Shown in pieces: positions 7,560 to 57,020 of a stretch of 64,000 nt of DNA. Origin of the DNA: Octopus bimaculoides (Eukaryota); contig NC_068983.1 in the NCBI RefSeq assembly GCF_001194135.2, positions 122,651,257 to 122,715,256 on the forward strand, in the 5' to 3' direction. A program made the position numbers and the translations under genes. A model generated the notes under the pieces. It made no database searches and was not told the DNA's origin. It was given only the letters and a program-made list of their open reading frames with translations. Each line of letters begins with the position of its first letter. Positions within the stretch are counted from its first letter, which is position 1.

Positions 7560-8462
7560 AAGAAGTCCAGTGTCAGCAAAATTGAAAATTGTGTAAAGAA
7601 AGAAAAACTTAAAGAGGAATAGAACACAAAGAAACATCATGAAAGGAGGAAAAAATGTACAAACAGTTTGTAAGAGATATGAATGCCAAGACAGATACAG
7701 AAGATTAGAGACTATAGATGAGGAGTGACCTGAAAATAGAGACAGAAGCACTTATACGCACAACACGAGAACAAGCGTTAAGGACTAACTCTGTGAAGTG
7801 CAGAATCAACAACACTACTGAAAGTGACAAATGCAGACTGTGTGGTGAGAGGGGTGAAACGGTATGGTACATTATTAACTTTCCCAAAATTGGCACACTG
7901 TGACTACAAAAGATGACATGCCAATGTGGCAAGAATGATCCATTGGAAGCTCTGTGGAAATCACGGCCTACAAAGTACAAAGATGTGCTATGAGCAAACC
8001 CCAGAAGGAGTCACTGAGAATGAAGATTGCAAAATCATGTGGGATGCAATCATTCAGTGCAATCACCTGACCAGACATTGTGGTGAATAAAAAAAGAAAG
8101 AACTTGCACAATAATCGACATAACATGTCCCGGTGACAACATGATCAAAAAGAAAAAAAAACTAAACAATTACGATTTGTAGTGGAAATACGAAGGTTGT
8201 CGGTCAATGAGGAGAGTAGACATGATACCAATAGTAATTGGCACACTTGGAAGTATCAGCACTCAACAACCAACATGGCTCAAAAAGATTGGTACAAATG
8301 TAAAGATAGAACACCTACAAAAATCAGCATTACTTGAAAGTGCAAGAATTCTTCAGAGGGTTCTTGAAGCATGACCAGTAAACCATGCTGGCTGTGGACA
8401 GCTGACACTTTCTATAATACACAGCAAAATAAGCTGAGAGTTTTCATCAAATAATAATAATG
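7560..8462 (+). mobile_element. 3' fragment of an RLE-type (R4/Dong-like) non-LTR retrotransposon
   Basis: CRLCGERGETVWYII, DYKR*HANVARMIHWKLC (decayed RHD motif) and C-terminal IPIVIGTLGS...LQKSALLESARILQRVLEA*. Ends in (AAT)n. Confidence 0.75.
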
Positions 8463-11302: not shown

Positions 11303-14300
11303 ATGAATTATATACTAAAAGGATATTTATCTCCCCCTAAATGTGGGTGTTGTGTTAGAATATTGCGCTACTCGGCGGAGGTAAAGAATACGCACACCAA
11401 CCGTTTTTGGCGTAACCCTACGAGAAGACTGTACGAAAAGCTACGTGACCGCGGTGGTGACAGACGCGGAACGTAGTCAATCATATAACTTGTTTTATTT
11501 TGACACGCGCATTGCGTTATACTTTTCTTTCCGTTTCCGACTCGAAACTGTTTACAGATTACAGCTATTCACGAACCTAGGTTCGTGGGGAGCGCTTCGC
11601 ACTTCGATGGTTGTGAAGCAACCATCTCACGAAGTTGCGCTCATGAGGAGCTCTTCGCGCTCCGATCGTTATAAAAAGAACACTCGTGTTTATATCTCTG
11701 ATGAGTAATAACCGCCGGATCTTCCAAATCACGTGATTTCACCCTTCCTTAGACTTGTCAATAACAGAGATCCTGCTGGGATGTAACAGTATTTCCCCCA
11801 TCAATGCCCTTACATATAATAAAACGCAATGAGTCTCTCGTCGGTTACGCTGGAAAAAGAAAAGTAAAACAACAAACGGAGTGAGAGTGAATTAAAAATC
11901 AGAGAGACTGAATGCGGGTGAACAGTAGTAAAAGGTTTTCCACTGTGGCGATCTTACGGTACGAGTCCTAAATATCGGCCTTTTCCGTAAAAAGTGTCTT
12001 CGGCGATCTTTACCAAAGATCGGNNNNNNNNNNATATCGGCCTTTTCCGTAAAAAGTGTCTTCGGCGATCTTTACCAAAGATCGGCCTTTTCCGTAACAC
12101 CCGCACGATCTTCTCTACGGGGTTACGGTTACAGTTTTAGTGTCAGGGTTAGGGTTAGTGTTTAGGGAGTTACGGTTACGGTTAGGGACGGAATTCCCTA
12201 ACCCAAACCCTAAAACTCAAATCCTAAGCCTAACCCTAACCCTAAACCCTTGAAAATAAATCGCGCTCTCTGTATGTCTTTCGCTTTTATGACGTTGTTT
12301 CCCTGTTTCTCTCCAACACTTTTTACGGAAAAGGCCGATATTTGGGACTCGTACCGTAAGATCGCCTCCACTGTTGTAAAGTAACTGGTATTTAAAAATA
12401 AAACTGCAAATTTTTATTGTTGTAGCGGGGTAGATGTGATGTGCCATATCAGTTCGATATGAGGTAGCCCACTACCGATTGAAAATGTAATGCTTGAAGG
12501 TTCTCGCATCAAAGAAACCAAGGAACATCGAAGAATCAACACCAAGAAGGAAGAAATATTATTTACATATGTTTATTTGTTTGCCCGACAGGTAGTTAAA
12601 GAGACAGTAGCAATTCTAGTGATAGTGACAACAAGAACAGCTCGCTGGTTAATAGTTGATAGTGAAGAAAAAGGTTGTCTGTCAGTAGAGAATGAAAGGG
12701 TAAGGAATGTATGGTGCTGACTAGAAAGGAAGAAAGGATAACGGTGGCATCGCCTTTCTTGCAGCCGAAAGCTTCTCTTCACATGTTGAGCGAAGGGTAA
12801 AGAGAAGTGCTGCTATTAAAAACTAACTTCCTTTTCCCAAGCTAAGATTCGAAACCAAATCTAAGGATTCTCGCTCGCCTGATTCATCACTGACCAAACA
12901 GACGTGAAAAACATTTTTTTATCCTGTCAAAAATTGATAGATGGTTTCCCTTCGACCTTTGACCTCTGCCATGTCATTTAAGGTTCAAGTGGACAGGAGG
13001 CGACTTACATAGGTAGGAATTTCTCCTGTAGTATGTCTATCCTTCTAGTTGTCATGACCATTGTAAATACAGCAATCTGTCAAGGGATGAGTTAGACAGA
13101 GAAACAGCTAGAGGTAAGACGGCCAGCTAGTAACTTTGCCAGTTAAGCAGGCAACACTGATCCAGATATTCAACATGAATGACCCAACACAGTAGCAGTC
13201 GCAGAACATAAACAGACACTACCGAATGACCAACGCACACACAGGCACAAAGCATGTCCGGTTCTACCTTATTATATTGACACAGTATCTACCCTGTTAA
13301 TTTCTTCTTGGCCAGCTCGAAAATAAAGTTGGTAACGTAGTTAGATTTTTGGTATATACAAGTAAATGCAAGTGTCATTTAAATAAATTATTTAAACTAC
13401 AATCCGATGTTTTCCCATTGTTTTATTTTGATGTCCATATGCCTACTTCATCTGCTACCTCAACATCTTTTGCTACACCTTTCCCACTACATCGTAAATT
13501 GTATTTAGTTTGTCTGTTTCACGTACACACAAACATACCAATATGTATATACATACATGCATACACACACACATATAAATATGAATATAGAATGGTAGTA
13601 CAACAATGCACCAATATTTACTGGAAATAGCAGTCGATAATATACAACACTGCAATAATAATTTGGTTAAAAAGAGACGATGAGCGATAGCTAGAGAAAT
13701 ATTGAGCTTTGTTTTTAATAACCAGTTGATCTAGCAAGCGGGGCCTCATATCAGTGAGGGGGACCGGTGTGCATTGATGCTGTTGAAAGGTAGACCCCGA
13801 AACGGCGCGCATTCTCTCCTGATGACCCCATACACTTGCTGGCTTCCGGTATGCGGAATTCTCGACTGGTAGCACTTGCATGTGCGAGTTGTTTGCAAGA
13901 CATACTGGCAAAGATATGAGCAGGAGGCGAACATAAGAAATTTCATCTTACCTGTAGGAAGTACATCAAATAAATGTCCAACCCAGATGTGGATAATCTA
14001 GGTTTCAAACTCTTCAAGATATGTTTGTTAACGTAAACTTGATTAGTTCTACTCAGCTAAATTTACCGAAACAAAATTTCATGCTTGCTTGAATGCCTAG
14101 CCGCTAACAGAAGTAAGAACAGTAAAAAAATTTTCAAAGAAAAAAATTTAAATAGTGCAATATAAGAGTATTGTTTTCCAGTCAAATAAAGCAACATACA
14201 GTGAAAGTATAAATATAGATATAGAATGGTGGTACAACAATGCATCAATATTTACTGGAAATAGCTTTCGATAATAAAGCTTCACTGTGGTATATGTTGG

Positions 14301-15115
14301 CAAAGATGTGTGTGGGTGGCGAACATAAGAAATCTCATCTTACCTGTAGGAGGAACATCAGATAAATGTCCAACCCAGATATGGATAATCTAGGACTTAG
14401 GTTTCAAACTCTTCAAGATGCGTTTGTCAACATAAATTTGATTAGTTCTCCTCAGCTAGATTTACCATAACAAAATTTCAAATGTTGCCATATCAATGCC
14501 AGTATACTCACTTGAACACCTAGCCACAAACAAAAACAAGAACAGTGAAAAAGTTTACAAAGAAAAGATTTTAAATAGTGCAATACAAGAGTATTGTTTT
14601 CCAGTAAAATAAAGCATCATACGGTTAAAGTATAAATATAAATATAGAATGGTGGTACAACAATGCACCGATATTTACTGGAAATAGCAGTCGATAATAT
14701 ATGACTAGGTCCTAGATTAGCCACATCTGAGTTGGACGTTTATTGGATGTTCTTCCTACAGGTAAGATGAAATTTCTTATGCTTGCCGTCCGCACACATC
14801 TTTGCCAGTATATATACAGTAAAGCTTTATTATAGCGTCGTATATTATTGACTGCTATTTCCAGTAAATATTGGTGCATTGTTGTACCACCATTCTATAT
14901 TTATATTTATACTTTAACTGTATGGTGCTTTATTTCACTGGAAAATGATACTCTTGTATTGCACTATTTAAAAGTTTTTCTTTGACAACTTTTTCACTGT
15001 TCTCTCTTCTGTTAGCTGTTAGGCATTCAAGCGAGTATACTGGCTTTGATGTGGCAACATTTGAAATTTTGCTTCCGTAAATCTATTTGAGGAAAACAAT
15101 ACTCTTGTATTGCAC

Positions 15116-15151
<36 letters not shown>

Positions 15152-18100
15152 TAGTATTATAACCCAATTTCATTCTTGTCTACTCAGGCTATGTTTTAAA
15201 GATGAGGAATTTTGCCCTAGAGGCCACGCCTTTCAATTGAGCAAACTCAAAGTTGCCATGCAAACTCTGCAGCACTTTTGACATAGGTGTGCAAATTTTC
15301 AGCTTAATCCAACCACATTTATTAACACTTTTGCCTGCACAACTGCTTGTGAGACAATGTCCGCCTGTTTCACAAATATATAGTAGATATACTAGCAGAT
15401 ATACCTGGTGTTGCCTGTGTCACATGGAATTGAAGAATTACTTTCCTTTTATATTTTCTCTAATGAACTGGAATACCTATGATTTGAATTTCACCAAAAT
15501 TTGAGATTAAGAATTTTAATGGGGGTTCTTTCCCTCTTTACACACCCTAACACAAATTCTAATCATGACATATTTATCCCATACTACTCATCTTTATGCC
15601 CAGATTCCAAAATCCAAATCTTATAAAACTCATTTAAAGGTTTTTACTCTGTATAATGATAAGTAGATAAGTAATTTAAACTCCAAATAAGTCACTTATC
15701 ATAGAAAGTTTAATAGAAAGGCATAGTTATGTTTGAATTAAGATATGAATTGACAGTTATAAGTAATATCATGTATGGTGTGTATTAAAAAAAAAAAAAT
15801 TTTGTGTGAGAATGAAATAAAAGCTAGAGTATGTGATAATATTTAGTAGGCTGCTAGAATGCAATGAGAAAAAGAGTTATAAATATTTCAATAGCTATAT
15901 ATAATGGAAATTTTGTTAGTTTGAGAACTTATATTCTTATTTTCAAATAACCAGTAGCTGCCTCAGTTTTAGTTTATACACAACTAGACTCAACAATATT
16001 CTTGAGTATGCTCGCAATTTTTCATGAGCTTAAAAAATATTTGTATCCGAATTTGTTATCTACTTTCTCCTTCATGAAGTCTTCTGAAGTAATAATAATT
16101 CCTGTTGTATATTACTTGCACTGAGGAGAACAGTGATATGTAATTAATTTAATTTAATCAAATTAATTTTAATTATTCTACCATGTTATTTACAGGTTAA
16201 TATCGCTGTTCAAAACGATCGTATGCATGTATTAAAATTCTTCTAAATTTTAACATCTCTTCATTTTTTAACATACTTGTTGAGTCTCTATGTGACGAGA
16301 AAAATTATGTGTGTATGAACGCTGTGAGGCACGAACTTGAAAGTAGGGACGAAGTAGTTCGCGTGTTTGCTCGGCGATAGCCAAGGAAGAAAAGGATTAT
16401 TGACCGGAAGCATGTGACCATGCCGGTGTAAGGGGAAGAGAGAGAGAGAGTGGTAGAGGGAGAAACAAAGGGAGGAAGTAGAAGAATAGGTGAGCAACGA
16501 GAGGAAAAGAGAAAGAGAGGAAGTAGGAGGGGGAAAAAGGGATACGTAGTAGTAACAGAGGAAGAACGAGAGGGGTAAAGCGAGATACGTAGTAGTAAAG
16601 AGGAAGAACGAGAGGGGGGAAAATGATAGAGGAAGAGAAAGAGATAGAGTAGCGTCGGAAAATATGAAGTTACNNNNNNNNNNNNNNNNNNNNNNNNNNN
16701 NNNNNNNNNNNNNNNNNNNNNNNNNNNNNNNNNNNNNNNNNNNNNNNNNNNNNNNNNNNNNNNNNNNNNNNNNNNNNNNNNNNNNNNNNNNNNNNNNNNN
16801 NNNNNNNNNNNNNNNNNNNNNNNNNNNNNNNNNNNNNNNNNNNNNNNNNNNNNNNNNNNNNNNNNNNNNNNNNNNNNNNNNNNNNNNNNNNNNNNNNNNN
16901 NNNNNNNNNNNNNNNNNNNNNNNNNNNNNNNNNNNNNNNNNNNNNNNNNNNNNNNNNNNNNNNNNNNNNNNNNNNNNNNNNNNNNNNNNNNNNNNNNNNN
17001 NNNNNNNNNNNNNNNNNNNNNNNNNNNNNNNNNNNNNNNNNNNNNNNNNNNNNNNNNNNNNNNNNNNNNNNNNNNNNNNNNNNNNNNNNNNNNNNNNNNN
17101 NNNNNNNNNNNNNNNNNNNNNNNNNNNNNNNNNNNNNNNNNNNNNNNNNNNNNNNNNNNNNNNNNNNNNNNNNNNNNNNNNNNNNNNNNNNNNNNNNNGA
17201 GCGAAAAAAAAAGAAAAGAGGATACTTCAAGCAAGCTGGCCATGAACTTCCAGCCATTGTTCCTGTCTACCGCCATGTTTGGATGCCTCACGTGCTGAGA
17301 AAGAAACTTACCAGTTCACCCGCCATTTTCTGACGCCTTCTTAAACAAGAAAAAAAAATCTTTTTTTTTTTCAGCAGACTGCAACACAGGTTTAGCGACT
17401 AAAAACAAAAAAAAATTTTTCTCATTGCTGCACACAGTACACAAAGAAAAAAAATCAAGAAATTTTGTTAAGTAAATTTTTCTTTCACACACACGTTACG
17501 GTTCCTGCAACACTTTGTCGGTTCTTTGGTCCTTTCTTTTACCTCCGTAAAGGAAAAAAAAAAATGAGTCTTCACCACTTACCAGTGTACTCTGGTGACG
17601 TTACGCTTTGGTTCACACAGTTGGACGCCTATTTTTCGACCCATGTGGTGCCTCACCAACAGCAACTAAGTCTATTGTACTGTGGGATACCTGCCCCTCT
17701 TGCACGCTCAGTGAAAGATCTTATCACTGACCCACATCCAGATGCGACTTATGTGTCCATTAAATCTGAGGTTTTCCGACGGAGCACCCAATCCGCCAGC
17801 AGTTAATTCCAGACGCTGATGCAGGATGAGCACTTGATAGACAGGATGCCATCTAAGTTTCTTCGTCGTTTGCATGAACTCAGCGACACACCGTTAGAGG
17901 ACAATTCTCTGCTCAGAAAATTATTTTTCTCTCGGCTGAGGCCGAATATTCGATCCATACAGGTCACAGCAGTTGACTCGAATTGGCTCGACCAGTTAGC
18001 CACCATGGCGGACAAGATTATAGAGTTCACTGTGCAGTCAGCATCATACCTGTTCAGACACCGTAGTAGCTTCCTCTACTACCACTAAGTCATCTCTCTC

Positions 18101-21100
18101 GTCACATGACGACATTTTGGAGAGAGTCAATGCATTAGCACGTTGCATGGACACATTGTGACAGGAACACGCCAGCTCTCGTCATCCTCACAGCAGAAGC
18201 CGTTCTAAGTCACGGTCATCTAGGTCTACTCCAACGGTTTCCAATCTCTGCTGGTACCATGCCACATTCAAGGACAAAGCCTGTTGTTGCATCCAACCCT
18301 GTTTGTTCAAGTTGTCGGGAAACTAATTACAGAAGATTTGAGCACGTCAGATTCTTCCTGCAAATTTTCACCTTATTGTGCATTCTTTGTAAAGGATCGT
18401 GTGTCTAACGAATCGTTCATGGTTGACACCAGATCCAGCTTTTCTATTTGGCCTTTGCGTTTTACTTCAGACAAGCCAAAGCAATTTGCTATCATCCTGC
18501 ACGCGGTGAATTTATCCCCGATAAAAACTTATGGTCAGGTCTTATTACACCTAGATCTCAACCTTCGAAGGGATTGTAGGTGGGTTTTTGTTGTAGCAGA
18601 TCTACCATATCCCATTCTGGGCACGGACTTCTTAAACCACTTTCACTTATTAGTAGATGTCAGGCGACAGAGACTTGTGGACGGTTCTACGTCTTTGTTT
18701 ATACCTACTCGGATTACTACTAATGATGATTTCAACCTGTCATTTTTTGTTGCCACTGCTGGTGACCAGTTCCACTTCCTTTTGGCTTCTTTTCCAGAGC
18801 TGGTGGATCTGACTTTCAAATCACACACTCGACTCGCCATTATATCACTACTTCTGGACCACCGGGTTTTTTTTTCACGTCCATGGAGACTCGCTCCTGA
18901 TCGGCTCAAAAAGGCTTGATCTAAGTTTGAACATATGCTTCAACTCAGCCTTATTCGCCCCTCCACCAGCTCTTGGGCATCTCCTCTACATTTGGCGCAG
19001 AAAGGGGATTCATACTTTCACCCGGTGGGGGATTACAGACGTTTAAATGCAGTCACTGTTACTGATCGCTATCCTATAAGGAATCTCCAAGATTTTTCTT
19101 CAAACTTGTACCTTTTTTCCAAGGTTGACCTCATCCGAGCTTACCATCAAATTCCAATGAACACTGATGACATTTCCAAAACTGCCGTTACCACTCGCTT
19201 TGGAAGTTTCGAGTTCCTGTTTATGAGCTTCGGCTTGCGGAATGCAATGAGCACATTCCAGAGGTTTGTCAATGAAGTTGTCTGTGGACTTGACTTTGTG
19301 TTTACTTATGTCGATAATTTGCTCATAGCTAGTGACACGCGTGAAAACCATCTCCAACACTTATCTCAACCTTTTTAGCGTCTTCGCACCTACAATGTGC
19401 GAATCAACCCTGATAAGTGTGTTTTCGGACAGGCCTCTCTGGAACTCCTAGGTCATTATATCAACTCTAATGGTATCTGACCTCTCTCCTCCAAAGTCGA
19501 TGCAATTCAACGCATCTCACCTCCCACTTCTCTACACCAATTGTGTCACTTCTTGGGAATCGTCAACTTCTATAGGAGATTTATACATAACTGTGCAGAC
19601 AAGTTACTTCCATTGACTCAACTACTGAAAGCAAATACAAAAAAAAAATGCTTCTATCACTCTATCTGCCAAGGCATTATCTTCTTTTGAGTCAGTCGAG
19701 AAGGAAATAGCTTCTGTTCCCTCGCTTGCACATCTGGCTCCTGATGCTTGTCTCTCTTTAACAGTTGATGCAGCGGGTTCTGCGGTTGGTGCTGTTTTGC
19801 AACATACCGTCGACAATCAAACTCAGCCTTTTATCTCGTCAATTACAGCCAGCTGAGCATCGTTACAGTACGTTTGATCGTGAACTCTTAGCAATCTACC
19901 TGTCGATTCGTCACTTTCAACATCAACTCGAGGGCTGGGATTTCGTGGTTTGTACTGATCACAAGCCTCTTACGTTTGTTCTGTCATCTAAATCAGATAA
20001 ACACTCGCCTCATGCTTTTCGTCACCTGGACCACATTTCCCATTTCACGAGTGACATTTGGCATATACCTGGAACAGAGAACGTGCCTGCTGACATACTC
20101 TCTCGTCTCCCTGTATGTTCTCTTTCAACTCCTGCTGCAATCGATTTAACTGCCCTTGCGCAGGATCAGCCAGCTCTGGACACATTTGATCTGACTTCCA
20201 CCAAGCTGTCCTGTTGCAAGTTTGCCTATTTTCCACTTCCGTCTGCTGAAGGCACAACTCTTTGTGACACAGCTACTGGTTCTCCCAGACCGTTTGTACC
20301 TGCGACCCACCAGTGTTCTGTTTTCGATGCCTTGCATTCACTGTCACATCCTGGCATCGCTGCCTCGGTGAAGCTTATTACGGCTCAGTTTTTCTGGCCT
20401 CATATGCACCATATGATCACCGCTTGGGCACATTCTTGTGTGAAATGCCAGCATTCTAAAATCCACAGGCATATTCGCGCTCCTCTTGGATAGTTTTCTC
20501 CACCAGAGACTCGCTTTCACCATGTCCACATTGATCTGGTGGGACCATGGCCCGTCAGTTGCGGGTTCTCTTACATATTCACATGCGTCGATCATTTCTC
20601 TCGTTGGCCAGAAACCATTCCAATAGTGGACATTTCCGCTGAGTCAGTCGCTCGAGCTTTCGTTTCTAACTGGATTACTCGCTTTGGTGTCCCAGCTAAA
20701 ATAACCACTGATCGTGGATGCCAGTTCGAAGCTTCCTTATTTTGTGAATTGTCGCGAATCTTAGGCATTCATCACATTCATATGACCAACTACCATCCAG
20801 CTTTTCACAGTCAACTGAAGGCTTCTCTATGTGCCACTCCTGATCCACAGTCTTGGACAGAATTCCTGCCTATCATTCTTCTTGGTTGTTGCACTGCTGT
20901 TAAAACAGACTTAGGTTTCTCCTCTGCTGAACTCCTTTACGGTACCATCCTGGCACTCCCTGGTACAATGGTGGCGCCAAACAATTCCTTGCGTTCTGGT
21001 CCAACGTTGTATGTCACCATACTTTGCTTGTATTTCTCAAGTCTTCTCCCCATGCATCCGCCTGACCAGTCTATTCCCTCTCACATCGCACTGGAATTAA

Positions 21101-24100
21101 CAAATGGACTCATGTTTTTGTTCAGGATGATTCTGTCAAGGGACCTCTCATTTCTCCTTATAAGGGATCATTTCATGTGCTATCATGCACACCCAAAACT
21201 TTTAGTCTTAACATCAATGGTCGGGCAGAGATCATGTCGGTTGACAGACTTAAAAGGTCATTTATATGGCACCTGCAACGACCACGACTATGATGCACAG
21301 GTGCCACTGACATAACACTGGCATGGACACTATTATGATTTCACTTGGCCTGATGAGTCTTCTCATGCTCAGCATATCACCAGAGCTCTCAGTCACTTTC
21401 ATCACCCCTGTGAGGCTCAACATTCGAAGATCATGTTTCACTACCTTGTCCCATGTCTTCCTGGGTCTACCTCTACCACAGGTTCCGTCCACTGTTAGAG
21501 TTCAGCACTTCTTTACACAGCTGTCCTCATCCATATGCATCACATGACCATACCAACACAGTCATCTCTCTTGCACACCATATCTAATGCCTCTTATTTC
21601 TTTATTGTTCACAAGGGGCTAAACATAGAGGGGACAAACAAGGGGATTAAGTCGATTACATCGACCCAGTGCGTAACTGGTACTTATTTAATCGACCCCG
21701 AAAGGATGAAAGGCAAAGTTGACCTCGGCAGAATTTGAACTCAGAACGTAACAGCAGACGGAATAGTGCTAAGCATTTCGCCCGGCGTACTATCGTTTCT
21801 GCCAGCTCACCACCTTCATCAAATGCCTCTTATGCCCAGCTTTTGTTTCAAGACACCTACACTTTGTCGAACATGCAAACTGACATTGCACATTCAGCAA
21901 AGCGTACTAGCTTCATTTCTTTCAAGCCTACGCATGTCCTCGATGGTCGCAGCCCATGTTTCACTGCTATGTAGCATAACTGTTCACACACAGGCATCAT
22001 ACGATCTACCTTTCACTCTAAGAGAGAGGCCCATCAATATCAACAGAGGTAGGAGCTTTCTGAACTTTGCCCAGCCTATTCTTATTCTTGCATTCTCAGA
22101 GCATTCATCTGCACCACTGACTTGATAACCTAAGATAATGGAAGCTATTAACTACCTCTAGCTTACCCACTTGGCATTTGATGGAGTATATTTTCTGTAC
22201 ATTTGTGGCATTTATTCTACCTGTGCACCTTCCACACACAAAAACTGTTTTCCCTGTTAACCTTCCTCTGATATAGCTGCACCTCTTTTTTTTCATAGCT
22301 TACATCAGGTACACATCCAGATCAAGCAGGATTCTGGTTTGTTGTACACAGTTTACAAATCAACTAAATAAATTTTCTCCAGTTTAATATCAGACAAGTG
22401 TAGAGCTGAGATTACTCTATTACTACTCAGGGTAACTTTGTCTAATCATATAAAGTAACATGTATGACAAGTGTCACTTTACTTGCTGGGATCATTCCAT
22501 TTTGTTTTTTTAGTAATGAAAAGTACATTTTTCAGTTTTGTTTGTCTCATGTTGCTGACCTCATTCACACACATGTATTTTCAATTATAAATTTTAAGTG
22601 ATAATCACAAGTAGAGCATAAAAGTTTGTCAGTTGACTTGGATCTTGTGGGGGTGGTTATATAACACCATTTATGTTTTTCTTAAATTTAGGTTTGAATT
22701 TGTTGATGTTATAGGATTTACTTAAGAAATTAGGCAGATTTACTTTTCCACCTACACATCTCTGACAAAATTTTTTTTACTTTGTTAATTCTTTTATTTG
22801 TTTTCCTTGATATCTATACTGAAATGACTTGAGTGAATTTATGCCTTTACAATAATATAACCATTACAACATATTCTCTTCTCTGATAATTTAAAAAAAA
22901 TCATGCCTCGATTAGGAATAGGTACTTTTTTTTTTTTTACTTTTTTTTCATTTTACTTTCACTAAAATAGTTTTCTTTCTACCAGTAATTTATCAACTTT
23001 CCATTTTGTTCGTTTTTCCTGATCTGTAGTTTTTAATTTGCCTTTGACCATAAGTTTTGTTGTATTGTGATTATTTTAAGGTGTGATGATATTTGTTTAA
23101 TATGTGCAGTGCTTTCTTTTTCTCTTTTTCGTTGTTGAAGGTGTAGTGAGATCTTGAATCAAACCTAAAATTATCAGTTGCCTGGTCCATGCCATGCATA
23201 GACCACATTTTTATCATGCAGCATGTCCTGACTATTAACCAATTAACTTGCAACAACATCATGCCATATCATGGATATTATATGCAATGTCCTTGAATTT
23301 TCTGCACTATTCTCAGTATGAAATCAAATTCATGCCAATAATAACTGCAGAGGTTTGAGAGCCACCAGAGAACACACATCTTCACCTCTTGCTTAGCAAC
23401 ACCAAGTTTTCCTTTGCTGAAACCAGCTAGAAATGAAAGGAATTCTTCATAGTTTCAGACGAACTTTACCCTGTTTCTCAAGCTTCACTAATTATTACCA
23501 TGTGTAGATCTAACACTGAAGCTTGAAAATTTATCTTGCTACATTATCACCAGCAACCATTTGAAATCTATATTCAGTTGCTCTCCTGTTCAATAACTCT
23601 TTCAATAAAAATATACTATTATGTCTGTCTGATCATTATAATATAACACTCAGCCAAAATAGCAACTATTAACAACACATGAGTGAACCTCTGAATATAG
23701 TGACAAATGTACATTTTACTGTATGACAATGGAGATATGATTTGGCATGACCATAATCAAGGATGTTTTCAAGGTTTTGGTTCATTGAATCATTTCATAT
23801 ATGATGTGAGGTATCTAGCTTGCATGTAGATGACACTTGGATTTGGAAAGTTATGGAGGAAGAAAAGTAATATCAATGGCATAAAAGTAGGTGTTGTTGA
23901 AAATGACAGCAATAAAATATTTGAAGTATGGGTGTTAGTGAATAGGTGTAACTCACTTTCTTTTTTTTTTCATGCTAGATACTGCATCAATTCCTCAAAT
24001 TCCACCACTGGTGACAATTCATCAAATTGAACCGGTATTGGCATCACCTCTATTTTATCTTCAAATTGTTCTTTTAATTTCTCTGCTTTGGAGTTTTCAT

Positions 24101-27100
24101 TAAACTCGTTCAATTAGGGTAATTCCACCCTAATTGCAGATATTATTTTTGTAATCTTCTTCTCAATTTCAACACTTTTTAAATATTTTATCATATTCCA
24201 TATGTTTCCCCTTCTGTAATCCTTCCTGTCTTCCATTATTGGTCTTCTCCGATGTTACTAGTATTGGTACCTCTTTCTTCTCTGTAGCTTTTTCAAATGA
24301 GGCTGCTGGCATCTCCCGTCTTTTTTTCTTTCGCTTCAGCAATTTCACTTTCTCCTCTGCGCTGGTTTCCCTTGGTGTTGCTGATCTCTCACACTGAGCC
24401 TCCTTTGCATTTTCTTTTCCCTTCTTTAGTGGACTTTTTGGTGGTGAGTCCATGTTTCCTTCTCTCTTCTTCTTTCTCTTCACCACCATAAACTGCTCCT
24501 GCACATTTTCTGTATTCTTTTCACATCCTGGGTTTTGCTCTTCGACGTTTTGTTCCTTCTCCTCGCCCTGCTGCTCCTGTTCCATGACATCCTCTTCATG
24601 TTTCTGGGGACACTTTGCCTTCATGTCTCCCCGTACTCCACACTGGTAGCATATTGGAGGTTTTCCCTCCATCACCACTCTTAATCTCACTTCCTCAGGT
24701 AATACGACCTCCCCTGCAATTTTGTGAAAATCCTGCAAACTGACCTGGACCGCCACCTCCAGGCCGTATCCCCAACAGTTTACCTTAGTCGTTCTTGTTA
24801 CTTTTAATACTTTAACTTCTTCCATGTTATAGAGGATGTCTGCCACCAGCCATACCCCATCAATCTCCGGGGGTACTCTACCAAACTTTACTCTAGCCAC
24901 ACGTTTGCCACAGTAAGTAGGCAGTAGTACCCACTCTGATGACCTTAACACCACAGTGGAGTGGTTTATCGCGTCCTGTTCATTCGCAAACCTAACCTCC
25001 ACTGTGCTGTACTTTTTCCCTCTGGTATAGAAAGTCGTGAGGTTTTTTACCTCCCTCAGACACTCTCTCAATGTTTCCACCGTAGCAATTTCAATTTTCA
25101 TTGCCGTGGACAGCGTTCTATATACTACTGTCTGCTTGGTTACATTCGCTGTCGTATCTTGCGGCGGGGTCAACCTTAGGCTGGTANNNNNNNNNNNNNN
25201 NNNNNNNNNNNNNNNNNNNNNNNNNNNNNNNNNNNNNNNNNNNNNNNNNNNNNNNNNNNNNNNNNNNNNNNNNNNNNNNNNNNNNNNNNNNNNNNNNNNN
25301 NNNNNNNNNNNNNNNNNNNNNNNNNNNNNNNNNNNNNNNNNNNNNNNNNNNNNNNNNNNNNNNNNNNNNNNNNNNNNNNNNNNNNNNNNNNNNNNNNNNN
25401 NNNNNNNNNNNNNNNNNNNNNNNNNNNNNNNNNNNNNNNNNNNNNNNNNNNNNNNNNNNNNNNNNNNNNNNNNNNNNNNNNNNNNNNNNNNNNNNNNNNN
25501 NNNNNNNNNNNNNNNNNNNNNNNNNNNNNNNNNNNNNNNNNNNNNNNNNNNNNNNNNNNNNNNNNNNNNNNNNNNNNNNNNNNNNNNNNNNNNNNNNNNN
25601 NNNNNNNNNNNNNNNNNNNNNNNNNNNNNNNNNNNNNNNNNNNNNNNNNNNNNNNNNNNNNNNNNNNNNNNNNNNNNNNNNNNNNNNNNNNNNNNNNNNN
25701 NNNNNNNNNNNNNNNNNNNNNNNNNNNNNNNNNNNNNNNNNNNNNNNNNNNNNNNNNNNNNNNNNNCGCTTTTACCTTACGATTATAAACTTTTTAAACA
25801 AATGTTCAGACAGGATTTACTTATTTTATTTTCGTTTTTTTAACCAAAAAGTTCAACCAAATGTTTTTCATACACTTTCTAATTGCTTTCTATTTTTCTT
25901 TTTTCCTCCTCTGGCAGGGTCATTTTTATATTTAACCCTTCTTTCTTTATCATACCATAATATTTGATTATCTTTTCCTCATTCTACTCCATCATCAGCA
26001 CACGTGGGCCTCTGCATAACTTTGCATTTTTCAATTGTTTCACTACCTCCCAACAATGGCGACTTCGCTTAAAAACTCGGCTAGAGTCCTTCCAAAAACA
26101 ACAAAAGAAAGCGGCTTGGTAGCTGTCGATGCCTATCTGCCTTTGTAAACATATAATAATTCAAGTGAAATACATTCACTGATTTCAAAAATAGAAATAA
26201 GACATTTCGAAATCTCTCAGAGAGAGTTATACAGTAGCAGCACAATAAAGTGATAGTATGTTGTCAACTTAATTCGACAGTCCCATGAAAGGGAAGAATG
26301 CTACTGCTATTTAGACTTAGGAAACACCGTTTCCTGTTGGCCTTGACACATTTCCTGGGTCCTTATGTTTACAAAGGGGAGATAAGCACCTCCACCCAGC
26401 ATCCAGAGACTAGTTTCAGAGTCATTGCTCATCATCAGTCTGGTGTAGCTTGGCTTGCTAGCTGAATTCTTTATTCTAAACACAGGGCCCAAACACAGTG
26501 GAGACTTACACAGACATGCGGGAACAAAAAACACATGAAAGGATGAATGTGAAATGAAATTAATTACAATGAAAATGAGACAGACATCTCGGCCCCGCTC
26601 CGGGATGAAACCGTGATTTCCTTTTCTTTTTAACCTTAATTTTAAATAATAATTTCCAGCCCCGCTCCGAGGCGAAAATGCGACTTACTTTTTTCGTTTC
26701 CCCTAACATTTTAAAGAAAATGTTTTAACGAATGTTCATTCAATAGTTACAGAATTTACTTATCGGACGTGTTTTTGCTTCGCTGNNNNNNNNNNNNNNN
26801 NNNNNNNNNNNNNNNNNNNNNNNNNNNNNNNNNNNNNNNNNNNNNNNNNNNNNNNNNNNNNNNNNNNNNNNNNNNNNNNNNNNNNNNNNNNNNNNNNNNN
26901 NNNNNNNNNNNNNNNNNNNNNNNNNNNNNNNNNNNNNNNNNNNNNNNNNNNNNNNNNNNNNNNNNNNNNNNNNNNNNNNNNNNNNNNNNNNNNNNNNNNN
27001 NNNNNNNNNNNNNNNNNNAAGCTGACCCCGTTAGAGGAGGAAAAGGCGAAAATGGAAATTTAGGTGGTGAAATATAAATCGTTTTCAAGGTAAAATAAAA

Positions 27101-30100: not shown

Positions 30101-33100
30101 TTTAATTTCCATTTTCGCCTTTTCCTCTTCTAATGGGGTCAACTTTACGTTTGGCCCTTCTTTCTGTACCATCTCTAGATATTTTCCAAATTTCTTGGCC
30201 ATGTCTTCATCCTAGTGCATTTCGTATTGCTTCAGCAGGCCTGGGACGACGGAAGCCCGACGCCACGTCGCTGCTGCATGTCTTCATTTTCTCCATCTCA
30301 GCAACGTCCACCAAACAACGGTGGAGTTATACTTAAAAGCTACTGCAAAGCAGCACAAAACGCCTAAAAAAAACTCAAAAAAAAACCGCAGCGAAGCAAA
30401 AACACGTCCGATAAGTAAATTCTGTAACTATTGAATGAACATTCGTTAAAACATTTTCTTTAAAATGTAAGGGGGAAAGGAAAAAGTAAGTCGCGTTTTC
30501 GTCTCGGAGTGGGGCTGGAAATTATTATTTAAAATTAAAGTTGAAAAGAAAAGGAAATCACGGTTTCATCCCAGAGCGGGGCCGAGATGTCCGTTTCATT
30601 GTAATTAATTTCATTTCACATTCATCCTTTCATGTGTTTTTTGTTCCCGCATGTCTGTGTAAGTCTCTACTGTGTTTGGGCCCTGTGTCTAGAATAAAGA
30701 ATTCAGCTTGCAAGCCAAGCTACACCAGACTGATGATGAGCAATGACTCTGAAACTAGTCTTTGGATGCTGGGTGGAGGTGCTTATCTCCCCTTTGTAAA
30801 TATAAGGACCCAGGAAATGTGTCAAGGCCAACAGGAAACGATGTTTCCTAAGGCTAAATAGCAGTAGCATTCTTCCCTTTCATGGTGCTACTACCGTATA
30901 AATCTCTCTGAGAGATTTCGAAATGTATTATTTCTATTTTTGAAATCAGTGAATGTATTTCACTTGAATTATTATATGTTTACAAAGGCAGATAGGCATC
31001 GACAGCTACCAAGCCGCTTTTTTGTTGTTTTTGGAAGGACTCTAGCCGAGTTTTTAAGCGAAGCCGCCATTGTTGGGAGGTTGTGAAACAATTGAAAAAT
31101 GAAAAGTTATGCAGAGGTCCACGTATGCTGAAGACGGAGATGACGGAGTGGAATGAGGAAAAGATAACCAAATATTATGGTATGATAAAGAAAGAAGGGT
31201 TAAATATAAAAATGACCCTGCCAGAGGAGGAAAAAAGAAAAATAGAAAACAAGACGGTCATGTTCAGAACAACATTTTCGAATGTAAATAGGAGAATAGA
31301 ACACGCGCTGCAGGAAGAGATAGAGGAAATGTTGGAGGAACACATAGGAGAACGGATAACATTCTTCACAAGAGGAAGGAAATATGTGACCATAGTAGTA
31401 ACCTTTGTATCAGAAGAGGAGGCGAAAAAATCTGACAACATGATGTTACAGGGCAAAATCCTTCCGTCGATAGACCCAGAATAGGTAATAGCCGCAACTT
31501 TTAATTCAGAGCTGAGGAAGAATGGAGAAGACCTGAGGATTGGAATGATAAGCCGAATACAACAAGTGAAATGTTGGGGCTATGGTATAGAAATAATCTG
31601 TGCAGTGAGCCCGGAATATTACGACGAAATGGCAGAAACTTTGGAATTACCAAATGTAGAAAAGCTCTAAATAATGTTGGAGTGGAGACCCCCAAAGTGT
31701 TACGGATGTGGTGAAGAGGGCACCTGAGAAGGAAATGCCCTAGAGCAGCAGTGGAAATGGTAGAGGAGAGTGTTCAGGAAGTTATAATGGTAGAAAACAG
31801 AGCATGACTGGAATTTTGTGGAGGTGAAACCCAGGGAAAGAGAGAGAAGTAAGTCACCGACGACAGTGGAATTTTAGAAGTGTAAAGTAATCGATGAGGA
31901 AACCCAACCCACGACGAGAAACAGAGAAAATTTACCAGTAAAGGACTTACAAGTACAGAGTCATTCAGACCAGAAACAAGACAACCCAGAATTGCAGAAA
32001 CCTAGACATAGACACACAGATAAAACACGTAGAATTACAGTCAAACGAACAGCAGAGATTTAGAGACAAAAAGAGACACCATGATAAACACAAACAAAAA
32101 GAAAAATTATACTGAGATATAGGACACCCCAACTTAAAAGATTGCAAAATTGAAAGACATTGTGAGGGACTGAACCCACTGAGGCTGGAGGTGGATGTTG
32201 AACCTCGCACCTCGGTGGTGAATTATTTGGACGAAAAGAAGTGGTAAGTCGTAATTTAATTAGAAAGTGTGTGAAAAACATTTGGTTGAACTTTTTGGTT
32301 TAAAAAAGGAAAAGAAAATAAGTAAATCCTGTATGAACATTTGTTTAAAAAGTTTATAATTGTAAGGTAAAAGGGAAGTCATGGCTAGAAATTGTTATGT
32401 AAAATGTAACGGTTTAAAGAAAAAGGAATCCATGGTTTCATCTCGCAGTGGGAGCGAGATGGCCGTCTCATTTGCAGTGTAGTTTTATTCATTTCACATT
32501 TATCCTTTCATGTGTTTTTTGTTCCCGCATGTCTGTGCATGTCCCCTTTGCGTTTAGGCCTTGTGCCAGTGATAAAAAATCAAGTTAGCAACTACGCCTT
32601 TTCTGTTCGATTTAATCATTTTTTTTTATCCCCGTGAGTTACATTGTTGATATTTGTTGAGGGTCTCCTGTAAGGGTGAACCTAATTGTTCAACCTAATT
32701 GTTGAGCTATTGAATTGTTCATTGCAGTTGTTTTACCTGTTATATTGTTTTCTTCGCCATTTATGGGTGAAGTTGTAAGAAAAGAAACTATGGAAAGTGA
32801 ACCAGTCGGCAACTATACTGCAGCAACGGGAAGAAGCTTGGATCTTTCTGGTTTGACGGCCAACATTTTTTTATGTCGTGTTTTTGGTACCGAAACACTT
32901 TCAAACTTCGAATACTTGTATATTTTGTGTTACAGAACAGATAAAAAATTTTGTATTCGAAGTTATTTCATGTAAAAAATTGTCGTATTTCGGTAATTTC
33001 AACCAATCGCTGACGTCTATTGAGGTGAAAACAATTACGCCGTGGAATGTAAACAACGGTGTTACGGGATTTTTTCCCTTGAATAAAATTAGTGCCGTTG

Positions 33101-34820
33101 TTTGTCAACAAAAACTATCCGTTGTCAACAACAACTATCAGCNNNNNNNNNNNNNNNNNNNNNNNNNNNNNNNNNNNNNNNNNNNNNNNNNNNNNNNNNN
33201 NNNNNNNNNNNNNNNNNNNNNNNNNNNNNNNNNNNNNNNNNNNNNNNNNNNNNNNNNNNNNNNNNNNNNNNNNNNNNNNNNNNNNNNNNNNNNNNNNNNN
33301 NNNNNNNNNNNNNNNNNNNNNNNNNNNNNNNNNNNNNNNNNNNNNNNNNNNNNNNNNNNNNNNNNNNNNNNNNNNNNNNNNNNNNNNNNNNNNNNNNNNN
33401 NNNNNNNNNNNNNNNNNNNNNNNNNNNNNNNNNNNNNNNNNNNNNNNNNNNNNNNNNNNNNNNNNNNNNNNNNNNNNNNNNNNNNNNNNNNNNNNNNNNN
33501 NNNNNNNNNNNNNNNNNNNNNNNNNNNNNNNNNNNNNNNNNNNNNNNNNNNNNNNNNNNNNNNNNNNNNNNNNNNNNNNNNNNNNNNNNNNNNNNNNNNN
33601 NNNNNNNNNNNNNNNNNNNNNNNNNNNNNNNNNNNNNNNNNNNNNNNNNNNNNNNNNNNNNNNNNNNNNNNNNNNNNNNNNNNNNNNNNNNNNNNNNNNN
33701 NNNNNNNNNNNNNNNNNNNNNNNNNNNNNNNNNNNNNNNNNNNNNNNNNNNNNNNNNNNNNNNNNNNNNNNNNNNNNNNNNNNNNNNNNNNNNNNNNNNN
33801 NNNNNNNNNNNNNNNNNNNNNNNNNNNNNNNNNNNNNNNNNNNNNNNNNNNNNNNTTCGCGAGTGAACAGGACGAGATAAACCACTCCACTGTGGTGTTA
33901 AGGTCATCAGAGTGGGTACTACTGCCTACTTACTGTGGCAAACGTGTGGCTAGAGTAAGGTTTGGTAGAGTACCCCCGGAGATTGATGGGGTATGGCTGG
34001 TGGCAGACATCCTCTATAACATGGAAGTTAAAGTATTAAAAGTAACAAGAACGACTAAGGTAAACTGTTGGGGATATGGCCTGGAGGTGGCGGTCCAAGT
34101 CAGTTTGCAGGATTTTCACAAAATTGCAGGGGAGGTCGTATTACCTGAGAAAGTGAGATTAAGAGTGGTGGTGGAGGGAAAACCTCCAATATGCTACTAG
34201 TGTGGAGTACGGGGATACATGAAGGCAAATAATCCATCAGGAATCACTGCAGAGATGCTCAAAATATCTGGCCCTGTACAGGGACGCTGTCAGTAAGGTG
34301 AGGGTTGGCAACGTGTACAGTGAAGAATTCCGGGTAGAGTTAGGGGTCCACCAAGGTTCAGTCCTCAGCCCCCTCCTATTTATCATAGTCCTCCAGGCAA
34401 TAACACAGAAATGCAAGACAGGATGCCCCTGGGAGCTCCTCTATGCTGATGACCTTGCCCTAATTGCTGAGTCACTATCAGAACTAGGGGAGAAGCTTCA
34501 GGTGTAGAAGCAAGGATTAGAATTGAAGGGCTTTCGAGTCAACCTAGCTAAAACCAAAGTCCTAATAAGTAGGAAGGTAGACAAAACACAAACCCCTTCA
34601 GGTAGATGGCCCTGCTCGATCTGTAGAAAAGGTGTAGGTAGAAACTCCATAAGTTGTACTCTATGGACAAGTGGTTGGCGTTTGGAAGGGCATCCAGCTG
34701 TAGAAACTCTGCCGGATCAGATTGTAGCCTGGTGCAGCCATCTGGATCGCCAGTCCTCAGTCAAATAGTCCAACCCATGTTAGTATAGAAAGTGGACGTT
34801 GAACGATGATGATGATGATG

Positions 34821-56637: not shown

Positions 56638-57020
56638 AGGGTGCAGGTGTGGCTGTGTGGTAAGAAGCTTGCTTCCCAACCACTTGGTTCCGGGTTCAGT
56701 CCCACTGTGTGGCACCTTGGGCAAGTGTCTTCTACTATAGCCTTGGGCCAACGAAAGTCTTGTGAGTGAAAGAAGCCTGTCATATATATATGTATATATT
56801 TATGTTTGCGTTTGTGTCTATGTTTGTCCCTCTCACCTTCACTTGACAACTGAAGTAGGTGTGTTTACATTCCTGTAGCTTAGTGATTTGGCAAAAAGAG
56901 ACTAATAGAATAAGCACCAGGCTTACAAAGAATAAGTCCAGGAGTCAATTTCTTCGACTAAAAGGTGGTGCTCCAACATGGCCGCAATCAAATGACTGAA
57001 ACAAGAAAAAGAATAAAAGA
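56638..57020 (+). mobile_element. Family C SINE
   Basis: Homologous to 38222-38818. Confidence 0.8.

What the first reader, a model, noticed from the sequence alone, without database searches (positions are those of the whole stretch)
13560..15120. Hammerhead-bearing 400-bp tandem repeat: candidate cephalopod retrozyme (circular RNA replicon)
Seen directly: monomers of about 393-407 bp in tandem, with a fully foldable type I hammerhead at 14381-14468 and a broken one a monomer away. Established: metazoan non-LTR retrozymes are non-coding tandem repeats of a few hundred bp with one type I hammerhead per monomer, yielding monomeric and circular RNAs, and Penelope pLTRs carry similar hammerheads. 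Inference: this is a retrozyme or non-autonomous Penelope derivative. No RT is encoded here.
Basis: partly seen in the sequence, partly recalled or inferred. Interest (0 to 1): 0.85.

Follow-up and report, generated by a model that had tools for sequence, protein, structure and literature searches.

The report
Decayed hammerhead-bearing 400-bp repeat (retrozyme-type)
A short non-coding repeat of about 400 bp, probably in an octopus genome, carries one intact and two broken copies of a self-cutting hammerhead RNA motif and looks like an old, dead insertion of a known kind of parasitic element (a Penelope-dependent "retrozyme"), so it is real but fairly ordinary.

Summary
The repeat spans 13574-15119. 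It holds two direct ~400-bp monomers, an 85-bp partial third monomer behind a 245-bp foreign insert, and one inverted monomer joined head-to-head at ~14705. Microsatellites lie on both sides. The copies are 85-88% identical.

The minus strand of 14387-14462 folds as a complete type I hammerhead, cleaving at 14394/14393. It is the only descriptor hit in the window, with 0.017 expected by chance. It matches Rfam Hammerhead_1 at 28.4 bits, below the gathering score of 34. The other two copies carry core mutations (G8U plus a 7-nt deletion; C3U plus truncation). Majority rule over the three copies gives an intact ancestral core.

Low GC, no ORFs with a Pfam match, no RT or GIY-YIG nearby, tandem-plus-inverted architecture and microsatellite flanks all fit a non-LTR retrozyme, now regarded as a non-autonomous Penelope-like element.

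The locus cannot release monomers today. No other copies could be retrieved, so copy number, stem covariation and circular RNA are untested. Octopus origin is supported by a 96%-identical repeat in Octopus sinensis. Verdict: new member of a known kind, modest interest.

The parts
13549..13575 (.). Left-flank degenerate (ATAC/CA/TA) microsatellite abutting the 3' end of the left arm
   Evidence: TRF row 13549-13575. The only similarity between the two flanks is microsatellite sequence.
13574..13658 (-). Partial monomer (segment A only). It is the outer, 3' end of the left arm and stops at ...TATTTATA.
   Evidence: 96% identical to 14631-14701 and 92% complementary to 14827-14911.
13659..13901 (.). 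Unrelated 245-bp insert replacing about 15 nt of the B-to-A linker. Origin unknown.
   Evidence: GC 47% against 32-34% in the repeat, and unique in the window. No Rfam match, no Pfam match for its 97-aa ORF, and an unexceptional fold.
13902..14297 (-). Monomer copy 1 (396 bp). It lacks a 24-nt stretch that copies 2 and 3 have.
   Evidence: blastn 81% over 402 columns to copy 2; 87.8% identity excluding gaps; alignment A1.
13981..14064 (-). Broken hammerhead of copy 1. It reads CUGAGUA (G8->U at 14051) and has a 7-nt deletion that removes helix III 3' half and the cleavage site (GAAACCUAG|AUUAUCC).
   Evidence: Alignment A1 columns 365-470. No RF00163 match at E<=10 in a 131-nt search.
14298..14705 (-). 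Monomer copy 2 (408 bp). Its 5' end in the sense orientation meets the inverted copy at ~14705.
14381..14468 (-). Intact type I hammerhead. Core CUGAGGA is at 14455-14449. Helix II is 14448-14406 (5 bp at the base, then an imperfect extension, 43 nt in all). GAAA is at 14405-14402. Helix III is A-U and C-G with loop CUAA. C17 is 14394 and cleavage falls at 14394|14393. Helix I is 7 bp plus an outer 4-5 bp.
   Evidence: RF00163 at 28.4 bits, E=1.6e-5. Unique descriptor hit. Helices I and II appear in the MFE fold.
14705..15119 (+). Inverted monomer copy 3, sense on the plus strand. It begins 7-8 nt upstream of the cleavage-site position (..CUAGGUC|CUAGAUUAGCC).
   Evidence: Inverted repeats I1-I5, 85-92% complementary; alignment A1.
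15080..15097 (+). Hammerhead 5' half of copy 3. It reads AAUCUAU-UUGAGGA-AAAC (C3->U at 15087) and then breaks off.
   Evidence: Alignment A1 columns 380-400; sequence.
15091..15119 (+). 29-nt duplicate of part of segment D, joined to the hammerhead 5' half at GGA(A/G)AAC microhomology. It forms the outer, 3' end of the right arm and stops at ...GCACTATT.
   Evidence: D5 and I7 (100% complementary to 14574-14602); blastn.
15119..15150 (.). Right-flank (TA)16 microsatellite
   Evidence: TRF row 15119-15150, 100% matches.

Best explanation
This is an old, inactivated insertion of a non-coding, hammerhead-bearing short tandem element of the metazoan non-LTR retrozyme type. Such elements are now regarded as non-autonomous derivatives of Penelope-like elements (PLEs). 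The host is probably an octopus.

Family-level mechanism, taken from the literature and inferred here: tandem monomers are transcribed on the hammerhead-sense strand. The type I hammerhead in each monomer self-cleaves. In this family it probably did so as a dimer, because the helix III octamer was probably the palindrome ACCUAGGU. Cleavage releases ~400-nt monomers with 5'-OH and 2',3'-cyclic phosphate ends. A host RtcB-type ligase can circularise them. A PLE reverse transcriptase/GIY-YIG endonuclease supplied in trans copies multimeric or circular RNA into new sites.

At this locus the layout suggests that priming occurred on both strands of a break in a TA-rich microsatellite. The two arms have their 3' ends facing outward against microsatellite sequence, and their 5' ends meet head-to-head at ~14705.

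Shown here: the repeat layout, the intact motif, the two mutated paralogues, the absence of coding capacity, and the flanks. Inferred: self-cleavage, circular RNA, PLE dependence and the two-strand priming. Today the locus could at most be cut once, at 14394/14393. It cannot release a monomer.
For: - Hammerhead: it is the only hit of a helix I/II/III plus core descriptor on both strands of 64 kb. The chance expectation is 0.017 per window, and 0 of 300 simulations reached the observed helix lengths.
- Rfam: RF00163 gives 28.4 bits, E=1.6e-5 for 131 nt across all 4227 families. Rescaled, that is about 0.008 for the whole window. The paralogous site in copy 1 scores nothing.
- Ancestral core: the three copies agree by majority on every core position. 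C3 reads C,C,U and G8 reads U,G,G.
- Helix III: copy 2 has ACCUAAGU and copy 3 has ACUAGGU, so the ancestor was plausibly the perfect palindrome ACCUAGGU. Its self-duplex is -11.4 kcal/mol against -0.2 for the present copy 2 sequence. This is the dimer-type helix III described for metazoan type I hammerheads (PMC4209133).
- Monomer: 396-408 bp, GC 32-34%. No ORF over 97 aa and no Pfam domain in the array, and none in the ORFs of at least 60 aa between 6.5 and 16.7 kb that were scanned. This matches the published definition: 150-450 bp tandem repeats, low GC, type I hammerhead, and 350-390 bp in mussel (PMC7229834).
- Architecture: a tandem plus an inverted copy abutting its upstream end, with microsatellite flanks and no discernible target-site duplication. 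This matches the PLE insertion structure (PMC8557442). A purified PLE protein cleaves and extends both DNA strands (PMC11167929).
- Link to PLEs: retrozymes are phylogenetically tied to PLE pLTRs (preprint 10.64898/2026.07.22.740005).
- Host: Penelope-like elements are present in octopus genomes (PMC13282606). The window shares a 96%-identical repeat with Octopus sinensis.
Against: - The Rfam score is below the curated gathering score (28.4 against 34). The match was invisible in the whole-window and 2.8-kb scans.
- The usually conserved G10.1-C11.1 pair is a G-U wobble here, and helix II is unusually long (43 nt).
- There is no covariation evidence. Only 2-3 copies exist, with a single one-sided change (C->U, keeping a G-U pair) in helix I.
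- No further copy was found anywhere: none in the other 62 kb of the window, none in viral or metagenome collections, none by a peptide-profile search, and none in 59 kb of octopus-like DNA. No cephalopod genome could be searched at the DNA level.
- The monomer RNA is not more structured than shuffles (z = -1.0 and -0.6).
- The 5' end of the inverted copy lies 7-8 nt upstream of the cleavage site, not at it.
- No PLE partner has been identified.
Confidence: 0.65

Rival explanations
1. The repeat is an ordinary local tandem or inverted duplication, or an unrelated unclassified repeat, and the hammerhead-like fold is a chance match with no ribozyme history.
For: The Rfam score is below the gathering score. 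The G10.1-U11.1 wobble and the 43-nt helix II are atypical. There is no covariation. No other copies were found. The monomer fold is unexceptional. Head-to-head junctions with microhomology can also arise from replication template switching.
Against: A complete core plus three helices is expected only 0.017 times per window, and 0 of 300 simulations reached the observed helix lengths. The motif sits exactly once per monomer of a ~400-bp low-GC tandem unit, which is the known context of type I hammerheads. Majority rule over the copies gives an intact core, and helix III is a near-palindrome as in known dimer-type motifs. Both flanks are microsatellites, as for PLE insertions.
Confidence: 0.15
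2. The units are pLTR-only remnants of an autonomous Penelope-like element, for example extremely 5'-truncated or internally deleted copies. On this view they are not a dedicated non-autonomous retrozyme family with its own circular-RNA cycle.
For: PLE pLTRs carry type I hammerheads. PLE insertions are partial tandems with an inverted 5'-truncated copy and microsatellite targets. Retrozyme monomers are homologous to pLTRs. Penelope elements expanded in octopus. A PLE hammerhead was dispensable for insertion in vitro, and no cleaved RNA ends were seen.
Against: More than two full head-to-tail periods of the same 400-bp unit occur with no ORF remnant between them. No RT or GIY-YIG signal appears in the array, nor in the ORFs of at least 60 aa scanned between 6.5 and 16.7 kb. 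A pLTR-ORF-pLTR element would not give that pattern without repeated precise deletions. The hammerhead has a canonical 7-bp helix I and a 2-bp helix III, rather than the minimal PLE form with a short helix I and no helix III.
Confidence: 0.15
3. The locus is a currently active retrozyme that is transcribed, self-processed and circularised into a ~400-nt RNA replicon. This is the stronger form of the first reader's idea.
For: One hammerhead is formally intact, with all core positions and three helices.
Against: Releasing a monomer needs two cleavage sites, and the neighbouring sites are destroyed: G8U plus deletion, and C3U plus truncation. The copies are 12-15% diverged. Helix III has lost its dimer potential. 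The criterion of Li et al., a hammerhead in every repeat, is not met.
Confidence: 0.05

Closest known systems
Metazoan non-LTR retrozymes (Cervera & de la Pena 2020, PMC7229834), e.g. the ~350-390-bp repeats of the mussel Mytilus galloprovincialis
   Same: Non-coding tandem monomers of 150-450 bp. Low GC. One type I hammerhead per monomer. A 2-bp helix III with a tetraloop, described there as the invertebrate form. A mollusc host. No LTR, PBS or PPT.
   Different: Only two direct units, a partial unit and one inverted unit at this locus. One of three ribozymes is intact. Helix II is much longer (43 nt) and has a G-U closing pair. Expression, circularity and genomic copy number are unknown. No sequence comparison with mussel elements was possible.
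Penelope-like element pLTR hammerheads and PLE insertion architecture (Cervera & de la Pena 2014 PMC4209133; Craig et al. 2021 PMC8557442; Frangieh et al. 2024 PMC11167929)
   Same: A type I hammerhead with a palindromic helix III region. Enlarged helix II. A partial tandem with an inverted copy abutting the upstream end. Microsatellite targets ((TA)n and similar) that obscure target-site duplications. Both target strands can be cleaved and extended.
   Different: No RT/GIY-YIG ORF in or near the array. The whole 400-bp unit is repeated, not pLTR-ORF-pLTR. Helix I is a full 7 bp and helix III is present, unlike the minimal PLE motif. The two outer ends lie 57 nt apart in monomer coordinates, against the 30-40-bp 'tail' described for PLEs, so equivalence is not shown.
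Newt satellite 2 and Schistosoma Sm-alpha hammerheads (the seed of Rfam RF00163)
   Same: The same core and type I topology. A palindromic helix III segment that favours cleavage as a dimer in multimeric transcripts. A satellite-like ~330-bp repeat context.
   Different: The score against RF00163 is below the gathering score. A 29-nt hairpin is inserted in loop 2. The present copy has one mismatch in the palindrome.

Membership tests
Hammerhead ribozyme, type I (Rfam RF00163) | Catalytic core C3-U4-G5-A6-N7-G8-A9, G12-A13-A14, A15.1-U16.1, and H17 at the cleavage site | tested here: met
   Copy 2, minus strand: CUGAGGA 14455-14449, GAAA 14405-14402, U16.1 at 14395, C17 at 14394. Not met in copy 1 (G8U, deletion) or in copy 3 (C3U, truncated).
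Hammerhead ribozyme, type I (Rfam RF00163) | Three helices around the core, with helix I open and helices II and III closed by loops | tested here: met
   Helix I is 7 bp plus an outer 4-5 bp. Helix II is 5 bp plus an extension. Helix III is 2 bp with loop CUAA.
Hammerhead ribozyme, type I (Rfam RF00163) | Score at or above the curated gathering score (34 bits) | tested here: not met
   28.4 bits. Nothing was reported at the gathering threshold for the window. The shortfall comes largely from the 29-nt insertion in loop 2 and one mismatch in helix III.
Hammerhead ribozyme, type I (Rfam RF00163) | Conserved G10.1-C11.1 pair closing helix II | tested here: not met
   G10.1 (14448) pairs with U11.1 (14406) as a wobble. 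Copy 1 has the same pair.
Hammerhead ribozyme, type I (Rfam RF00163) | Compensatory changes in the helices among related copies | tested here: inconclusive
   Only 2-3 copies are available. There is one one-sided change in helix I (C-G to U-G) and no double change.
Hammerhead ribozyme, type I (Rfam RF00163) | Site-specific self-cleavage | not testable with these tools
   This needs in vitro transcription of the minus strand of 14340-14500, as a monomer and as a dimer.
Non-LTR (metazoan) retrozyme | Head-to-tail tandem monomers of roughly 150-450 bp | tested here: met
   Two full direct monomers of 396 and 408 bp, a partial third, and one inverted monomer. TRF did not call the array.
Non-LTR (metazoan) retrozyme | A type I hammerhead in each monomer (Li et al. 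require this of all repeats for an 'active' element) | tested here: not met
   Each monomer has the motif position, but only copy 2 is intact. This is met only for the inferred ancestor.
Non-LTR (metazoan) retrozyme | Non-coding, low GC (<45-50%), no LTR/PBS/PPT | tested here: met
   GC 32-34%. The longest ORF is 97 aa and has no Pfam match.
Non-LTR (metazoan) retrozyme | Multi-copy and dispersed in the genome | not testable with these tools
   No cephalopod genome could be searched at the DNA level. There was no copy elsewhere in the window, in viral or metagenome collections, by peptide profile, or in 59 kb of related DNA.
Non-LTR (metazoan) retrozyme | Expressed as monomeric linear and circular RNA | not testable with these tools
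   No transcriptome data were available.
Penelope-like element (autonomous) | ORF encoding a telomerase-like RT and a GIY-YIG endonuclease | tested here: not met
   No Pfam domain in the array ORFs, nor in the ORFs of at least 60 aa scanned between 6.5 and 16.7 kb (a few ORFs over the telomere-like repeats, over the repeat itself and at 16400-16669 were not scanned). The nearest RT, at 18935-19378, belongs to an LTR retrotransposon with RNase H and integrase.
Penelope-like element (insertion signature) | Partial tandem with an inverted copy adjacent to the upstream end, and a microsatellite target | tested here: met
   The tandem runs on the minus strand from 14705 to 13574. The inverted copy at 14705-15119 abuts its upstream end. 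The flanks are (ATAC/CA)n at 13549-13575 and (TA)16 at 15119-15150. The definition is from PMC8557442.
Penelope-like element (insertion signature) | A 30-40-bp 'tail' extension at one end | tested here: inconclusive
   The two outer ends differ by 57 nt in monomer coordinates, and the right end carries a discontinuous 29-nt piece. Equivalence to the PLE tail cannot be shown from one locus.

The most novel reading that the evidence does not exclude
This is a relic of a previously undescribed octopus retrozyme family with an unusually extended helix II. Its intact members elsewhere in the genome still make ~400-nt circular RNAs. The head-to-head, microsatellite-flanked layout is a fossil record of PLE-type priming on both target strands from a multimeric or circular retrozyme RNA. 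That would be direct structural evidence that the PLE machinery mobilises retrozymes.
Probability: 0.3. Interest if true: 0.5.

Novelty: new member of a known kind. Interest (0 to 1): 0.3.

Why it matters
If the family is confirmed genome-wide, it would extend non-LTR retrozymes to cephalopods. I found no report of retrozymes or hammerheads in cephalopods in the searchable literature. It would also add a hammerhead variant with a long helix II. The insertion architecture could give mechanistic support to the recent phylogenetic proposal that animal retrozymes are mobilised by Penelope-like elements. As a single decayed locus, it mainly serves as a seed sequence for that genome-wide search.

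Tried and rejected
- Tandem Repeats Finder called no ~400-bp array. The tandem was shown by the repeat finder, blastn and alignment instead.
- Rfam scans of the whole window at gathering threshold and of 2.8 kb at E<=10 reported no hammerhead. Only a 131-nt search with laxer filters showed RF00163.
- Searches for relatives all failed. An 18-mer in viral contigs gave 0 hits. A 20-mer in JGI metagenomes gave 4 loci that match only the 20-mer, so they are chance hits. A profile of the peptide translated from segment B found no candidates among 5.8 billion proteins.
- The source genome appears absent from the protein collections. An exact look-up of a window ORF found nothing. The 334-aa ORF has no homologue.
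- 38 kb of an unnamed ENA assembly and 21 kb of Octopus sinensis contain no copy of the repeat and no hammerhead.
- I tested whether the 245-bp insert hides a second hammerhead, because it has CUGAUGA at 13819-13825 and GAAAC at 13799-13803. The order and spacing fit no topology, and neither the descriptor nor the cmscan search hit it.
- I tested whether the monomer RNA is unusually structured, as a viroid-like rod would be. It is not.
- I looked for a target-site duplication. Only microsatellite similarity exists between the flanks.
I replaced it with concatenated ORFs.
Full report
**What is in the sequence.** A repeat family occupies window 13574-15119 and occurs nowhere else in the 64 kb (blastn of the monomer). 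I dissected it with the repeat finder and a four-way alignment (A1). On the plus strand the layout is:

- a degenerate (ATAC/CA)n microsatellite at 13549-13575;
- an 85-bp partial monomer at 13574-13658;
- a 245-bp unrelated insert at 13659-13901;
- monomer copy 1 at 13902-14297;
- monomer copy 2 at 14298-14705;
- a head-to-head junction at about 14705;
- an inverted monomer, copy 3, at 14705-15119;
- (TA)16 at 15119-15150.

Start-to-start spacings are 392, 399 and 423 bp depending on the segment. Copy 1 lacks 7 nt and 24 nt that copy 2 has. The copies are 84.5-87.8% identical pairwise excluding gaps, and their GC is 32-34%. Tandem Repeats Finder did not report a ~400-bp period. So "tandem" here means two full direct units and a fragment, not a long array.

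**The hammerhead.** The minus strand of copy 2 reads, 5' to 3': AAUCUAG / CUGAGGA / GAACU...AGUUU (43 nt) / GAAA / C-CUAA-G / U / C^ / CUAGAUU.

- All invariant core positions are present: C3 14455, U4, G5, A6, G8 14450, A9 14449, G12-A14 14405-14403, A15.1 14402, U16.1 14395 and C17 14394.
- Helix I is 7 bp and continues after a 2x2 internal loop to 14468/14381.
- Helix II has 5 bp at its base and an imperfect extension.
- Helix III is 2 bp with a CUAA loop.
- Helices I and II appear in the unconstrained minimum-free-energy fold.

Rfam's Hammerhead_1 model (RF00163) matches 14388-14461 on the minus strand end to end with 28.4 bits. The E-value is 1.6e-5 for the 131-nt stretch against all 4227 families. 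That is below the curated gathering score of 34, and the match was filtered out in the whole-window and 2.8-kb scans. By simple rescaling the E-value is about 0.008 for the whole window across all families.

I wrote an independent descriptor: core, helix I >=4, helix II >=3 and helix III >=2. It finds this site and no other on either strand. First-order Markov simulations of the window give 0.017 hits per window, and none of 300 reached helix I >=7 with helix II >=5. A still looser descriptor finds nothing else in the window or in 67 kb of other fetched DNA. The motif is therefore beyond chance at the scale of the window.

Departures from the canonical motif are a G10.1-U11.1 wobble in place of the conserved G-C pair, and a 29-nt hairpin inserted in loop 2.

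**The paralogous sites.**

- Copy 1 has CUGAGUA (G8 to U, at 14051). It also has a 7-nt deletion that removes the 3' half of helix III and the cleavage site. A 131-nt Rfam search of that region gives no hammerhead match at E<=10, which serves as an internal control.
- Copy 3 carries the 3' part (..CUAGGUC/CUAGAUUAGCC, from 14705) at its beginning. It carries the 5' part (AAUCUAU-UUGAGGA-AAAC, 15080-15097, C3 to U) at its end. There it jumps at GGA(A/G)AAC microhomology into a 29-nt piece of another part of the monomer (15091-15119).

Majority rule across the three copies gives an intact ancestral core. The helix III octamer is ACCUAAGU in copy 2 and ACUAGGU in copy 3. A plausible ancestor is the perfect palindrome ACCUAGGU. 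Its self-duplex is -11.4 kcal/mol, against -0.2 for today's copy 2. A palindromic helix III that lets two ribozymes in a multimeric transcript pair is the signature of metazoan type I hammerheads (PMC4209133). With only two witnesses at the deciding position, this ancestral state is an inference.

There is no covariation evidence. The only helix change is one-sided: C-G to U-G in helix I.

**Surroundings and coding capacity.**

- The longest ORF in the array is 97 aa. It lies mostly in the foreign insert and has no Pfam match.
- The ORFs of at least 60 aa that were scanned between 6.5 and 16.7 kb have no Pfam match either. A few ORFs in that span were left out of the scan: those over the telomere-like repeats, those over the repeat itself, and one at 16400-16669.
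- No RT or GIY-YIG endonuclease was found next to the array.
- The nearest reverse transcriptase, at 18935-19378, belongs to a degenerate LTR retrotransposon with RNase H and integrase.
- The monomer RNA is not more stable than shuffled controls (z = -1.0 sense, -0.6 antisense).

**Host.** The best named homologue of the neighbouring LTR element is from Octopus sinensis, but at only 56% identity. Window 38241-38429 is more informative: it is 95.8% identical over 189 bp to an Octopus sinensis chromosome. The window therefore comes from an octopus or a close relative.

**Interpretation.** Metazoan non-LTR retrozymes are defined as non-coding, low-GC tandem repeats of 150-450 bp with one type I hammerhead per monomer. 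They yield monomeric linear and circular RNAs, and the mussel family has a 350-390-bp unit (PMC7229834). A 2026 preprint ties them phylogenetically to the pLTRs of Penelope-like elements (10.64898/2026.07.22.740005).

PLE insertions are typically partial tandems with an inverted copy abutting the upstream end. They favour microsatellite targets that hide target-site duplications (PMC8557442). A purified PLE protein cleaves and extends both strands of its target (PMC11167929).

The locus fits this picture. In the hammerhead-sense orientation the tandem runs from 14705 down to 13574, and the inverted copy runs from 14705 up to 15119. The two 5' ends therefore meet in the middle, and the two 3' ends face microsatellite DNA. 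The only similarity between the flanks is the microsatellite itself.

The most likely explanation (about 0.65) is an old retrozyme-type insertion made by PLE machinery and since decayed. Penelope-like elements are known in octopus genomes (PMC13282606).

**What the locus can do now.** With one intact site, a minus-strand transcript could be cut once at most. No monomer can be released, so this locus is not a circular-RNA source. The surviving ribozyme has a weak helix III and a wobble at 10.1-11.1, so even single cleavage is uncertain. I would put detectable in vitro activity at roughly even odds.

**Rivals.**

1. A chance motif in an unrelated duplication (0.15). The sub-threshold Rfam score and the lack of other copies favour it. 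The chance statistics, the once-per-monomer position, the ancestral core and the near-palindromic helix III count against it.
2. pLTR-only remnants of an autonomous PLE (0.15). This is hard to separate from the retrozyme reading without the genome's PLE library. More than two clean 400-bp periods with no ORF remnant argue against it.
3. A currently active replicon (0.05). The two dead ribozymes contradict it.

**Limits.** No cephalopod genome or transcriptome could be searched at the DNA level. Scans of viral contigs and metagenome contigs, a peptide-profile search and 59 kb of fetched octopus-like DNA gave no further copy. Copy number, covariation, the PLE partner, expression and circularity therefore remain untested.

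Three things remain unexplained: the 245-bp insert, the internal jump at the right end, and the 7-8-nt offset of the inverted copy's start from the cleavage site.

**Verdict.** The class assignment is probably right. The element is a decayed new member of a known kind, not an active or categorically new system. Interest is modest (0.3).

Noticed in passing
window 11947-12366: A foldback-like structure. Its 51-nt terminal inverted repeats are 98% complementary (11947-11997 and 12316-12366). They enclose head-to-head degenerate telomere-type arrays, (TTAGGG)n at 12116-12188 and (CCCTAA)n at 12195-12250, centred on GGAATTCC. A 62-nt direct duplication also spans an N gap at 11972-12085.
   Followed up: partly
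window 13659-13901: A 245-bp insert inside the repeat array. GC is 47% against 32-34%. It is unique in the window, has no Rfam or Pfam match and folds unexceptionally. It contains CUGAUGA (13819-13825) and GAAAC (13799-13803), but in an order and spacing that fit no hammerhead topology.
   Followed up: yes
window 17465-21315 (+): A degenerate LTR-retrotransposon gag-pol: DUF7041, RVT_1, RNase H, integrase zinc finger and integrase core, split over several frames. The closest relatives (69-74% identity) are in an unnamed ENA assembly, ERZ21867824. The best named hit is Octopus sinensis LOC115220280 at 56%.
   Followed up: partly
window 24169-25173 (-), 31083-31484 (+), 33880-34200 (+): A 334-aa ORF with a CCHC-type zinc knuckle and two paralogous fragments nearby. 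It has no Pfam match and no homologue at E<=1e-5 among 5.8 billion proteins. It may be the gag-like ORF of an unannotated, lineage-specific retroelement.
   Followed up: partly
window 38241-38826 and 56640-57017: An interspersed repeat shared with Octopus sinensis chromosome CM016874.1 (L007 2753-3176). Identity is 95.8% over 189 bp, 87% over 263 bp and 76% over 414 bp. This is the best clue to the organism.
   Followed up: partly
window 7718-7900 and 8183-8371 (+): Short ORF pieces that by eye resemble the C-terminal zinc-finger and tail region of non-LTR (LINE) ORF2 proteins (CRLCGE..ETVWY and IPIVIGTLG...LQKSALLESARILQRVLE). Pfam gave no match.
   Followed up: no
window 16516-16623: A 43-nt purine-rich tandem repeat of 2.6 copies, next to an assembly gap at 16670-17245.
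   Followed up: no
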